Assembly: GCF_902652985.1 (NCBI RefSeq)
Contig: NC_047016.1
Location: 38,502,001 to 38,566,000, forward strand
DNA from: Pecten maximus
Lineage: Eukaryota
Length of the DNA stretch: 64,000 bases
Direction: 5' to 3'
A program made the translations under genes and the position numbers. The notes beneath the pieces are model-generated. The model was not told the DNA's origin. It did not search any database and saw nothing but the letters and a program-made list of their open reading frames with translations. Shown here piece after piece: positions 61,724 to 63,118 of this stretch. Numbering within the stretch: the first letter of the stretch is position 1; every line of letters starts with the position of its first letter.

Positions 61724-63118
61724 CTAGAACTCGTCAGTGATGTTAGAGACATCATACAGCTGCTCCGTCCTTCTAGGACTCGTCAGTGATGTTAGAGACA
61801 CCATACAACTGTTTCGTCCTTCTAGGACTCGTCAGTGATGTTAGAGACGTCATACAGCTGTTTCGTCCTTCTAGGACTCGTCAGTGATGTTAGAGACACC
61901 ATACCGCTGTTTCGTCCTTCTAGAACTCGTCAGTGATGTTAGAGACGTCATACAGCTGCTCCGTCCTTCTAGGACTCGTCAGTGATGTTAGAGACATCAT
62001 ACAGCTGTTTCGTCCTTCTAGGACTCTTCAGTGATGTTAGAGACGTCATACAGCTGTTTCGTCCTTCTAGGACTCGTCAGTGATGTTAGAGACACCATAC
62101 CGCTGTTTCGTCCTTCTAGAGCTCGTCAGTGATGTTAGAGACGTCATACAGCTGCTCCGTCCTTCTAGGACTCGTCAGTGATGTTAGAGACACCATACAG
62201 CTGTTTCGTCCTTCTAGAACTCGTCAGTGATGTTAGAGACGCCATACAACTGCTCCGTCCTGCTAGGACTCGTCAGTGATGTTAGAGACACCATACAGCT
62301 GTTTCGTCCTTCTAGGACTCGTCAGTGATGTTAGAGACATCATACAGCGGCTCCGTCCTTCTAGGACTCGTCAGTGATGTTAGAGACGTCATACAGCTGC
62401 TCCGTCCTTCTAGGACTCGTCAGTGATGTTAGAGACACTTTACAGCTGTTTTGTCCTAGGACTCGTCAGTGATGTTAGAGACATCATACAGCTGTTTCGT
62501 CCTTCTAGGACTCGTCAGTAATGTTAGAGATATCATACAGCTGTTTCGTCCTTCTAAGACTCGTCAGTGATGTTAGAGACATCATACAGCTGTTTCGTCC
62601 TTCTAAGACGCGTCAGTGATGTTAGAGACATCATACAGCTGTTTCGTCCTTCTAGGACTCGTCAGTGATGTTAGAGATATCATACAGCTGTTTCGTCCTT
62701 CTAAGACTCGTCAGTGATGTTAGAGACATCATACAGCTGTTTCGTCCTTCTAGACGCGTCAGTGATGTTAGAGACATCATACAGCTGTTTTGTCCTTCTA
62801 GGACTCGTCAGTGATATTAGAGACATCATACAGCTGTTTCGTCCTTCAATGACTCGTCAGTGATATTAGAGACATCGTGTAGCTGTTTCGTCCTTCTATG
62901 ACTCGTCAGTGATGTTAGAGACATCATACAGCTGTTTCGTCCTTCTAGGACTCTTCAGTGATGTTAGAGACGTCATACAGCTGTTTCGTCCTTCTAGGAC
63001 TCGTCAGTGATGTTAGAGACACCATACAGCTGTTTCGTCCTTCTAGGACTCGTCAGAGAGGCTAGGGACATTAAACAATTGTTTCGTCCTTAGAGGAAGT
63101 GTCAATGATGCTAGGGAT
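61724..63118 (-). ncRNA. Tandem array of ~27 minimal hammerhead ribozyme motifs (49-bp unit) plus one degenerate terminal unit
   Basis: Minus-strand unit, e.g. 62671-62628: ACATCA-CTGACGA-GTCC-TAGAA-GGAC-GAAA-CAGCTG-TA^TGATGT, then a CTCTA linker. All conserved core nucleotides and three stems are present; about 13 units keep intact core boxes. Transcription and activity are not shown. Confidence 0.85.

What the first reader, a model, noticed from the sequence alone, without database searches (positions are those of the whole stretch)
61724..63118. A satellite built almost entirely of hammerhead ribozymes: ~27 tandem 49-nt self-cleaving units
Seen: the reverse complement of the 49-bp unit is ACAUCA-CUGACGA-GUCC-UAGAA-GGAC-GAAA-CAGCUG-UA^UGAUGU-CUCUA. 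That is a 6-bp stem I, the CUGANGA box, a 4-bp stem II, GAAA, a self-complementary stem III (ACAGCUGU) and a GUA cleavage triplet, so 44 of 49 nt are ribozyme. Several variants preserve structure: UGGUGU gives a G-U in stem I, GUUC/GUCU give wobbles in stem II, and CUGAAGA changes the free position. Others inactivate the core (GAAA to GGAG or AAAA; CUGACGA to CUGACGC). About 13 units keep intact cores, more of them in the right half. Established: minimal type I hammerheads with a short palindromic stem III occur in Penelope-like elements and cleave as dimers. Known ribozyme satellites and retrozymes (newt satellite 2, schistosome Sm-alpha, metazoan non-LTR retrozymes) have monomers of a few hundred nt. 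Inference: the tandem layout supplies the dimer partner in cis, and UGAUGU-CUCUA-ACAUCA can close stem I between neighbouring units. A minus-strand transcript would be cut into 49-nt (and 98/147-nt) pieces that might circularise. This could be an ultra-minimal retrozyme, or an RNA-shredding cassette upstream of the same-strand GPCR gene.
Basis: partly seen in the sequence, partly recalled or inferred. Interest (0 to 1): 0.92.

Follow-up and report, generated by a model that had tools for sequence, protein, structure and literature searches.

The report
Hammerhead-ribozyme minisatellite in king scallop
A 1.4-kb stretch of the king scallop genome is 28 head-to-tail copies of a 49-base self-cutting "hammerhead" RNA motif, about half still intact. 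It is one of hundreds of such arrays in this genome. Its size was set by ordinary DNA duplication, and nothing shows it to be a new kind of mini-replicon or a gene-control device.

Summary
Window 61723-63111 (minus strand) holds 28 full 49-nt units plus a 21-nt partial unit. Each unit is a canonical metazoan type I hammerhead, and four units reach Rfam's gathering score. By motif rules, 13 of 28 units and 14 of 27 junction-spanning (type III-like) ribozymes are intact.

The locus is not unique. The genome is Pecten maximus, identified by an exact match of assembly size. It holds at least 6,064 near-consensus units in hundreds of arrays, some about 7.6 kb long. About half of the sampled arrays sit between the head and tail of an old retrozyme-like repeat of roughly 385 nt. 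This array has neither head nor tail.

Three results point to DNA-level growth:
- Arrays carry private fixed variants, and some have dead consensus cores.
- Core positions mutate about as fast as stem positions, and only somewhat slower than loops.
- This locus lies in a segmental duplication. The other copy, 27 kb away, has 522 bp between the same flanks, against 1,382 bp here. There is also a 196-bp higher-order period at 97-98% identity.

No contig from RNA or likely-RNA runs bridges the array and its flanks. The GPCR ORF lies 18.5 kb away.

The verdict is an HHR-only minisatellite, a new variant of known ribozyme satellites and retrozymes. The scan has already noted this family several times on other DNA of this genome.

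The parts
61744..63111 (-). 28 full tandem 49-nt units (units 8 and 14 are 48 and 46 nt), each one type I hammerhead motif; 13 have intact core and helices
   Evidence: Rfam
61723..61743 (-). 21-nt partial unit at the 3' end (helix I 5' strand, CUGACGA, start of helix II). The array ends abruptly mid-unit against unique sequence.
   Evidence: flank unique except for one paralog
63112..63141 (-). 30-nt degenerate remnant of a further unit at the 5' edge. Like unit 1, it keeps the family's ancestral CCCUA linker, whereas units 2-28 have the private CUCUA linker.
62623..62671 (-). Unit 10, identical to the array consensus. It is the best Hammerhead_1 match (62628-62671, 35.8 bits). Predicted cleavage is after GUA, between plus-strand 62634 and 62633.
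62538..62592 (-). Example of a junction-spanning, type III-like hammerhead: helix III from the palindromes of two neighbouring units, helix I closed by the CUCUA linker.
   Evidence: Hammerhead_3 41.8 bits, below gathering 48.5; folds; 14 of 27 junctions intact
61744..62380 (-). 3' half (units about 16-28) with a 196-bp (4-unit) higher-order period: 97-98% identity at offset 196 against 90-91% at offset 49. Units 15, 20 and 24 are identical, as are units 22 and 26.
61250..61722 (-). 3' flank, conserved at 95-98% in a single paralog at G000:C2:38591046-38591520; otherwise unique in the genome
63105..63590 (-). 5' flank (the stretch overlaps the first 7 nt of unit 1), conserved at 92% in the same paralog at G000:C2:38592043-38592530. 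The alignment continues at 88% through units 1-3.

Best explanation
This is a minisatellite whose repeat unit is one complete canonical metazoan type I hammerhead ribozyme of 49 nt, read on the minus strand. It belongs to a genome-wide family in the king scallop.

Origin (inferred for this locus, shown for other arrays). The founder motif is the ribozyme module of an old, non-autonomous, retrozyme-like repeat of about 385 nt. That repeat has about 260-280 nt of head, one hammerhead and about 85 nt of tail, and tails run directly into the next head. In many copies the 49-nt module alone has multiplied, up to more than 20 units in the carriers sampled. Arrays elsewhere reach about 7.6 kb, though their flanks were not examined.

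Growth. Multiplication happens at the DNA level, by unequal exchange or replication slippage, and it does not depend on ribozyme activity. At this locus the array has no carrier flanks. It sits in a segmental duplication of at least 7.4 kb, and since that duplication it has come to differ from its sister copy by about 860 bp. Part of that history is duplication of 196-bp blocks of four units.

Behaviour if transcribed (inferred, not shown). A minus-strand transcript would pair the palindromes of neighbouring units into an 8-bp helix III. This forms nested type III-like or double hammerheads at about half of the junctions, and the RNA would be cut after GUA into pieces of 49 nt and multiples up to about 245 nt. 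Nothing indicates that this locus is transcribed or that the array is maintained by selection.
For: - Array and ribozyme identity.
- Family size: 3,185 forward plus 2,879 reverse pattern hits against 0 in the control. There are 2,541 first-look candidates for the array query, and arrays reach about 7.6 kb (C10:27736757-27744346) and 5.1 kb (C4:17879781-17884913).
- Carrier: head-(HHR)n-tail with n from 0/1 to more than 20. Hits start sharply at the head's 5' end, with 238 first-look candidates. Tail-to-head junctions in L074 and L081 give a monomer of about 385 nt. Profile HMMs find a head or a tail beside 9 of 19 arrays that were ascertained by the ribozyme pattern alone.
- DNA-level, activity-independent growth: each array has private fixed variants, and several have a dead consensus core (G12A in L020, L064, L071; A9C in L034). 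Mean mismatches are 5.99 within arrays and 8.70 between them. Private mutations hit non-CpG core positions at 0.074 per site, stems at 0.077 and loops/linkers at 0.103, over 347 units.
- This locus: both flanks have one paralog 27 kb away at 92-98% identity. That paralog has 522 bp between the flanks, against 1,382 bp here. Window 56175-59105 is also duplicated there at 95%.
- Block duplication: the 196-bp period is at 97-98% identity, and there are groups of identical units.
- Edges and founder effect: the 5' edge units are degenerate and keep the ancestral linker, while units 2-28 share a private T.
- Folding. Junction census 14 of 27.
- The Mytilus retrozyme precedent has repeats of 350-390 bp with type I HHRs and circRNAs (PMC7229834). 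The rule that a short palindromic helix III works as a dimer in tandem comes from PMC4209133.
Against: - This array has no trace of the carrier's head or tail, even with profile searches at E up to 50. Its derivation from the carrier therefore rests only on family resemblance.
- Ten of the 19 sampled arrays are equally 'orphan'. An array-only mode of spread is therefore not excluded.
- I could not read the paralog. The 3' flank alignment stops exactly at the array boundary. Whether this copy expanded or the other contracted is open, and so is whether all 522 bp there are ribozyme units.
- Block periodicity could in principle also come from reverse transcription of multimeric RNA.
- About half of the units remain intact, which is more than in some other arrays of this family according to earlier notes of this scan. 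Weak selection cannot be ruled out.
- Contigs of the four runs laid (one recorded as RNA, three only guessed to be RNA) contain family sequence at appreciable depth, so the family may be expressed somewhere.
Confidence: 0.72

Rival explanations
1. Ultra-minimal retrozyme. Array transcripts cut themselves into 49-nt pieces (or 98/147/196-nt pieces). These circularise, are copied by a retroelement reverse transcriptase in rolling-circle fashion, and re-insert as new ribozyme-only arrays.
For: - About half of the arrays, this one included, have no recognisable carrier flanks.
- Predicted folds give efficient-looking junction hammerheads.
- Family sequence is present in contigs of RNA or likely-RNA runs.
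- The 98/196-nt periodicities would fit multimer templates.
Against: - Arrays whose consensus core is catalytically dead have still expanded to 16-22 units.
- The core is not protected from mutation within arrays.
- This array changed length between conserved flanks of a segmental duplication, so the change was in place and not a new insertion.
- It ends mid-unit, not at a cleavage site, and has no target-site duplication.
- A lone 49-nt unit misfolds and has only a 2-bp helix III to hold its ends for ligation.
Confidence: 0.08
2. Regulatory cassette. The array is co-transcribed with the same-strand adhesion/secretin-type GPCR gene, or lies in read-through transcripts, and destroys or insulates those RNAs.
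For: The array is on the same strand as the 7tm_2 ORF at 41678-43228, and about half of the ribozymes are intact.
Against: - The ORF is 18.5 kb from the array. The nearest long same-strand ORF (45219-46898, no Pfam match) is 14.8 kb away.
- A composite transposon block at about 52000-56177, with copies elsewhere at 92-100% identity, lies in between.
- No contig covers 61400-61667 or 63075-63208.
- Hundreds of equivalent arrays are scattered in unrelated contexts.
- The core is not conserved above background.
Confidence: 0.03
3. Amplified end of a Penelope-like element. The unit is the pLTR hammerhead of a PLE, and PLE enzymes mobilise both the arrays and the roughly 385-nt carrier. This is compatible with the best explanation as far as the carrier's origin goes.
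For: - The genome holds at least 150 GIY-YIG matches, with open frames up to 929 aa.
- Animal non-LTR retrozymes have been proposed as PLE derivatives (bioRxiv 10.64898/2026.07.22.740005).
- Carrier copies begin with the last ~25 nt of the tail. This resembles the 30-40-bp 'tail' extension of PLE insertions (PMC8557442; my inference).
Against: - No RT or GIY-YIG domain appears in ORFs of the 1.5-kb flanks of about 70 family loci.
- None of the listed GIY-YIG places lies within 5 kb of a listed ribozyme place, though both lists are partial.
- The motif is the canonical 6-bp/4-bp type I, not the PLE min-HHR with a long helix II and no helix III.
- According to PMC8557442, bivalve genomes are dominated by Naiad PLEs, which lack canonical hammerheads.
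Confidence: 0.3

Closest known systems
Non-LTR retrozymes of invertebrates, especially the Mytilus galloprovincialis retrozyme (Cervera and de la Pena 2020, PMC7229834)
   Same: Both are in bivalves. Both have thousands of type I hammerheads lacking the classic loop-loop contacts, carried in non-coding tandem or dispersed repeats of 350-390 bp. The scallop carrier I reconstructed is about 385 nt from ribozyme to ribozyme.
   Different: In this array the monomer is the ribozyme alone: 49 nt, with 44 nt of ribozyme plus a 5-nt linker and no spacer RNA. No circular RNA has been shown. Growth looks DNA-driven.
Hammerhead-bearing satellite DNAs: newt/salamander satellite 2, Schistosoma Sm-alpha, Dolichopoda pDo500
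   Same: All are tandem genomic repeats that each carry a type I hammerhead with a weak palindromic helix III, which works through a neighbouring copy.
   Different: Those monomers are about 330-500 bp, so one ribozyme is a small part of each unit. Here the unit is essentially nothing but the ribozyme. The arrays are short dispersed minisatellites, not large satellite blocks.
Double-hammerhead (dimeric) self-cleavage, described by Forster et al. 1988 as cited in PMC4209133; also used by ASBVd multimers according to my background knowledge
   Same: Two copies pair their helix III halves into one extended helix that serves both catalytic cores. The predicted fold of two adjacent units is exactly this structure.
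   Different: Here the two partners are separated by only 5 nt. The same RNA can therefore be drawn as a chain of nested type III hammerheads. Activity is untested.
Tandem-repeat-containing mobile elements of bivalves (e.g. DTC84 of Donax trunculus, PMC3879986) and the general transposon-to-satellite route (PMC6947457)
   Same: The architecture is left arm, variable number of short core repeats, right arm. Arrays are seeded from inside a mobile element and then expand by unequal exchange.
   Different: Those cores are not ribozymes, and the elements are MITE-like DNA transposons. I saw only the abstracts of these two papers in a search listing.
Minimal hammerheads of Penelope-like elements (Cervera and de la Pena 2014, PMC4209133)
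   Same: Both involve a short or absent helix III, action as a dimer, and massive copy numbers in invertebrate genomes.
   Different: PLE min-HHRs have helix II of 7-8 bp and helix I of 4-5 bp, and they sit in pLTRs about 3 kb apart around an RT/GIY-YIG ORF. None of these features applies here.

Membership tests
Hammerhead ribozyme (Rfam clan CL00010; type I, RF00163) | Conserved core CUGANGA ... GAAA and an NUH cleavage triplet | tested here: met
   Present in the consensus unit and intact in 13 of 28 units. The other units carry known inactivating changes: G12A, A9C, or GAAA to GGAG.
Hammerhead ribozyme (Rfam clan CL00010; type I, RF00163) | Score at or above the curated gathering threshold of the covariance model | tested here: met
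   Four units score 35.0-35.8 bits against a gathering score of 34. The junction-spanning Hammerhead_3 match stays below threshold (41.8 against 48.5).
Hammerhead ribozyme (Rfam clan CL00010; type I, RF00163) | Three helices around the core | tested here: met
   Helix I has 6 bp and helix II has 4-5 bp. Helix III has only 2 bp within one unit but 8 bp between neighbours. The MFE folds of the 57-nt junction, the dimer and the tetramer show the three-way junction, while a lone unit misfolds.
Hammerhead ribozyme (Rfam clan CL00010; type I, RF00163) | Covariation supporting the helices | tested here: inconclusive
   In representatives of 28 arrays, 95.8% of cells are paired and there is one compensatory change (U4-A41 to C-G). 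This is not above the shuffled controls (130 of 500).
Hammerhead ribozyme (Rfam clan CL00010; type I, RF00163) | Site-specific self-cleavage | not testable with these tools
   This needs in vitro transcription of 1-, 2- and 4-unit constructs.
Non-LTR retrozyme (metazoan) | Tandem genomic repeats each bounded by type I hammerheads | tested here: met
   Met trivially by the array. It is also met by the carrier, whose tail-to-head junctions give a monomer of about 385 nt.
Non-LTR retrozyme (metazoan) | Monomer of about 150 to over 1000 nt with non-ribozyme spacer RNA | tested here: not met
   The array monomer is 49 nt with a 5-nt linker. The feature is met only by the carrier family, and this locus lacks that carrier.
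Non-LTR retrozyme (metazoan) | Expression as linear and circular monomer RNA | not testable with these tools
   Only assembled contigs were available. They show family sequence in four runs, of which one is recorded as RNA and three are only guessed to be RNA. They show no ends, no strand and no circles, and nothing bridges this locus's flanks.
Penelope-like element pLTR hammerhead | Location in repeats flanking an RT plus GIY-YIG ORF | tested here: not met
   No such domain appears in ORFs beside about 70 family loci. The only RT ORFs in the window (35193-37563) are RVT_1/zf-RVT and lie 24 kb away.
Penelope-like element pLTR hammerhead | Min-HHR architecture: long helix II, short helix I, no helix III | tested here: not met
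   Helix I has 6 bp, helix II has 4 bp, and a palindromic helix III is present. This is the 'canonical' metazoan type as defined in PMC4209133.
Minisatellite evolving by unequal exchange | Array-private variants, higher-order periodicity, degenerate edge units, and length difference between paralogous copies | tested here: met
   Only the 5' edge is degenerate; the 3' edge is abrupt.

The most novel reading that the evidence does not exclude
Ribozyme-only arrays are an autonomous layer of the retrozyme life cycle. Transcripts of arrays like this one would shred themselves into 49-nt and multimer RNAs. These would circularise and seed new 'orphan' arrays without any carrier sequence. They would be the smallest ribozyme-bearing mobile RNAs known. 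The roughly half of arrays that lack head and tail, this one included, would be their insertions.
Probability: 0.08. Interest if true: 0.85.

Novelty: new variant of a known kind. Interest (0 to 1): 0.45.

Why it matters
Hammerhead-bearing tandem repeats are known in animals, but with monomers of hundreds of nucleotides. In the papers I could search I found no description of repeats whose unit is the ribozyme alone.

Such arrays are a natural extreme case of the rule that a weak helix III is rescued by a neighbouring copy. They would be a ready-made substrate for testing how densely packed hammerheads fold and cut during transcription.

They also show how a functional RNA module inside a mobile element can turn into an ordinary minisatellite. 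The pair of duplicated loci described here gives a dated natural experiment on that process.

For genome annotation, at least 6,000 Rfam-like hammerhead hits in this scallop should be read as repeat content, not as regulated ribozyme genes.

Tried and rejected
- Carrier flanks at this locus. BLAST with nine carrier copies, with head and tail sets and with nhmmer profiles at E up to 50 found nothing.
- Flank similarity among arrays. All-against-all BLAST of the flanks of 19 arrays found only four weak pairs. Flank conservation therefore needed profiles.
- Tandem 390-bp periodicity by TRF in three carrier loci. None was found, because the copies are too diverged. The tail-to-head junctions came from BLAST instead.
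- Covariation support for the helices. The result was uninformative because the family is too uniform.
- Locus-specific transcription. Only contigs were available. They cover only the repeated units, and their loose ends run into head and tail sequences of other copies.
- PLE adjacency. I did not try to obtain them by another tool.
- Reading the paralogous array at C2:38591521-38592042.
- Literature. A search with 'scallop' returned hammerhead-shark papers. Searches for bivalve, minisatellite or satellite together with hammerhead found no description of 49-nt arrays.
- GPCR 'shredding cassette'. Rejected on distance, on the intervening transposon and on the lack of linking contigs.
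Full report
**What is there**

On the minus strand, window 61723-63111 is a head-to-tail array with a 49-bp period. Tandem Repeats Finder gives 28.0 copies, 91% matches, no indels and score 2234. My parse gives 28 full units, a 21-nt partial unit at the 3' end (61723-61743) and a 30-nt degenerate remnant at the 5' end (63112-63141).

The consensus unit is window:62623-62671:-. It reads helix I 5' strand (6 nt), CUGACGA, helix II (4 bp, 5-nt loop), GAAA, the palindrome ACAGCUGU containing the GUA triplet, helix I 3' strand, and a 5-nt linker.

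Rfam places Hammerhead_1 on four units at 35.0-35.8 bits (gathering score 34) and on most others at 17-33 bits. Hammerhead_3 fits across unit junctions at up to 41.8 bits, below its threshold of 48.5. Every hammerhead match is on the minus strand.

**State of the ribozymes**

I required CUGANGA, CGAAAC, at least 3 of 4 helix II pairs, at least 5 of 6 helix I pairs, an intact palindrome and GUH. By these rules 13 of 28 units are intact.

The inactive units carry one or more of these defects:
- GAAA changed to GGAG (seven units).
- G12A.
- A9C (CUGACGC).
- Small deletions.
- Broken helices.

Counted as junction-spanning ribozymes, 14 of 27 are intact. In that arrangement the core comes from unit n and the cleavage site from unit n-1. 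Helix III forms from both palindromes, and the linker closes helix I.

Predicted folds support the neighbour-assisted mechanism:
- A lone unit misfolds, with core CUG pairing to the helix III CAG.
- The 57-nt junction fragment gives the canonical three-way junction with an 8-bp helix III.
- The 98-nt dimer gives the classical double hammerhead.
- Four units give nested type III-like ribozymes.

The z-scores are modest, between -2.1 and -2.7. This is the principle described for metazoan type I hammerheads with a short palindromic helix III (PMC4209133). Self-cleavage itself is untested.

**The genome and the family**

G000 has 918,306,378 bases in 3,983 contigs. That is exactly the published Pecten maximus assembly (PMC7191990), which confirms the species named in earlier notes of this scan.

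A 32-nt core pattern with up to two mismatches occurs 3,185 times forward and 2,879 times reverse, and never in the reversed control. Eighteen independent loci hold arrays of 4-29 units at 49-bp spacing. With the whole array as query there were 2,541 first-look candidates. Arrays reach about 7.6 kb (C10:27736757-27744346) and about 5.1 kb (C4:17879781-17884913).

The locus is therefore one mid-sized member of a genome-wide family.

**The carrier element**

Many arrays are preceded by a conserved 'head' and followed by a conserved 'tail' of about 85 nt. Loci found through the tail or the head show head-(ribozyme)n-tail, with n running from 0 or 1 (for example L063) to more than 20.

A search with a long copy gave 238 first-look candidates whose matches begin sharply at one position. 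In L074 and L081 the tail runs straight into the next head. The ribozyme-to-ribozyme monomer is therefore about 385 nt, and copies begin with the last ~25 nt of a tail. Copies are 67-78% identical, so the carrier is old.

This matches the bivalve precedent. Mytilus has about 5,000 type I hammerheads in 350-390-bp repeats that are expressed as circular RNAs (PMC7229834).

With profile HMMs, 9 of 19 arrays ascertained by the ribozyme pattern alone have a head or a tail beside them, and 10 do not. Some of those ten look like diverged carrier subfamilies by eye. That is an impression, not a test.

**This locus has no carrier**

BLAST and profile searches, down to E of 50 with all filters off, find no head or tail beside the window's array. 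The 3' flank is unique in the genome apart from one paralog. The array ends abruptly in mid-unit at 61723. At the 5' end the units become degenerate.

Unit 1 and the remnant keep the family's ancestral CCCUA linker. Units 2-28 all carry a private CUCUA linker. This fits amplification in place from very few founder units, with the edge escaping homogenisation.

**Evidence on how arrays grow**

1. Each array has its own fixed variants. Mean distance is 5.99 mismatches within arrays and 8.70 between them. Several arrays of 16-22 units have a catalytically dead consensus: G12A in L020, L064 and L071, and A9C in L034. Expansion therefore does not need an active ribozyme.
2. Across 347 units of 28 arrays, private mutations occur at 0.074 per non-CpG core position, 0.077 in stems and 0.103 in loops and linkers. 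The core is barely protected.
3. At this locus, both flanks recur once, 27 kb further along the chromosome:
   - Window 61250-61722 matches C2:38591046-38591520 at 95%, and at 98% for the 243 nt nearest the array.
   - Window 63105-63590 matches C2:38592043-38592530 at 92%.
   - Window 56175-59105 matches C2:38585057-38587995 at 95%.
   - Between the flanks the paralog has 522 bp where the window has 1,382 bp. On the 5' side the alignment continues through units 1-3 at 88%.
   - The two copies of one ancestral array therefore now differ by about 860 bp, or about 17.5 units, at fixed flanks.
4. The 3' half of the window's array has a four-unit period. Identity is 97-98% at offset 196 and 93-96% at offset 98, against 90-91% at offset 49. 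Units 15/20/24, 22/26, 3/22, 4/23 and 9/12 are identical.

Together these results point to unequal exchange or slippage on DNA.

**What remains open at the locus**

The 3' flank alignment to the paralog stops exactly at the array boundary and does not enter the partial unit. About 398 bp of the paralog's inter-flank stretch are unread. I could not fetch that stretch. I therefore cannot say which copy changed, or whether all 522 bp are ribozyme units.

**Transcription and neighbours**

Only assembled contigs were available. Of the four runs laid, one is recorded as RNA-Seq and the other three are only guessed to be RNA. In all four, contigs cover units inside the array. None covers 61400-61667 or 63075-63208. 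The loose ends run into head and tail sequences, so they come from other family members. The family may therefore be expressed somewhere, but this locus is not shown to be.

The same-strand 7tm_2 (secretin/adhesion-type) ORF is at 41678-43228, 18.5 kb away. A composite transposon block at about 52000-56177, with copies elsewhere at 92-100% identity, lies in between. The paralog alignment ends exactly where that block begins. I see no basis for a link to the receptor gene.

**Penelope-like elements**

The genome has at least 150 GIY-YIG matches, so PLE-type enzymes are probably present. However:
- No RT or GIY-YIG domain occurs in ORFs of the flanks of about 70 family loci.
- The motif is the canonical 6/4-bp type, not the PLE min-HHR.
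- According to PMC8557442, bivalve PLEs are mostly Naiads, which lack canonical hammerheads.

A recent preprint argues that animal retrozymes derive from PLE pLTRs. The ~25-nt terminal redundancy of the carrier recalls the PLE 'tail' extension. This is a lead, not a finding.

**Comparison and novelty**

The thing works like the hammerhead satellites and retrozymes. Its ribozyme is a bona fide member of the hammerhead family by sequence and structure model.

As a repeat it fails one defining feature of retrozymes, a monomer of a few hundred nucleotides with spacer RNA. It fits the definition of a minisatellite evolving by unequal exchange. I found no paper describing ribozyme-only 49-nt arrays, and the P. 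maximus genome paper mentions neither hammerheads nor Penelope. I therefore rate it a new variant of a known kind.

The scan has already reported this family several times on other DNA of this genome. I re-tested the main claims of those notes: the species, the carrier of about 390 nt, the neighbour-assisted fold and DNA-level growth. I agree with them. This window adds the pair of duplicated loci with different array lengths, and the estimate that about half of arrays lack recognisable carrier flanks.

No consensus of an autonomous element was built.

Noticed in passing
window 56175-63590 and G000:C2:38585057-38592530: A segmental duplication of at least 7.4 kb at 92-98% identity, offset about 27 kb on the same chromosome. 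The array lies inside it, and the two copies differ by about 860 bp between the same flanks.
   Followed up: partly
window about 52000-56177: A composite block of transposon sequence with many copies elsewhere in the genome; the best are 97-100% identical and the rest mostly 92-99%. It has internal repeats of about 180 bp and includes the 199-aa ORF at 54007-54606. The paralog alignment ends exactly at its edge, so it either inserted after the duplication or marks the duplication's end.
   Followed up: partly
window 41678-43228 (-), with ORFs 44539-45261 and 45219-46898 (-) upstream: An ORF with a 7tm_2 (secretin/adhesion GPCR) domain, E 9e-15. The two upstream ORFs have no Pfam match and may be its extracellular part.
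   Followed up: no
window 35193-37563 (-): Reverse-transcriptase ORFs (RVT_1 at E 2e-32, zf-RVT at E 6e-9). They look like a LINE-type element and are unrelated to the array.
   Followed up: no
window 27674-28669 (+): A 331-aa ORF of the CECR6/TMEM121 family (E 4e-39).
   Followed up: no
window 63599-64000: Two further tandem repeats just beyond the array's 5' flank: period 41 (and 20) at 63599-63703, and period 32 with 9.3 copies at 63706-64000, running off the window.
   Followed up: no
window 63417-63475 and 63534-63590: Two segments of about 55 nt that each match dozens of places genome-wide at 85-91% (211 first-look candidates). They may be fragments of a short interspersed element.
   Followed up: no
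L063:1299-1710; L074; L081: Carrier copies begin with the last ~25 nt of the tail, a terminal redundancy. That is what a slightly more-than-unit-length copy of a circular or tandem template would give, and it resembles the 30-40-bp 'tail' of Penelope-like insertions.
   Followed up: partly
G000 C11:1.88 Mb, C12:1.4-2.25 Mb, C14:1.25-3.2 Mb, C15:1.26 Mb, C17:1.2-1.7 Mb, C18:1.16 Mb: Many of the longest arrays lie within the first 1-3 Mb of chromosome-scale contigs, which may indicate a subtelomeric bias. I did not evaluate this against chromosome lengths.
   Followed up: no
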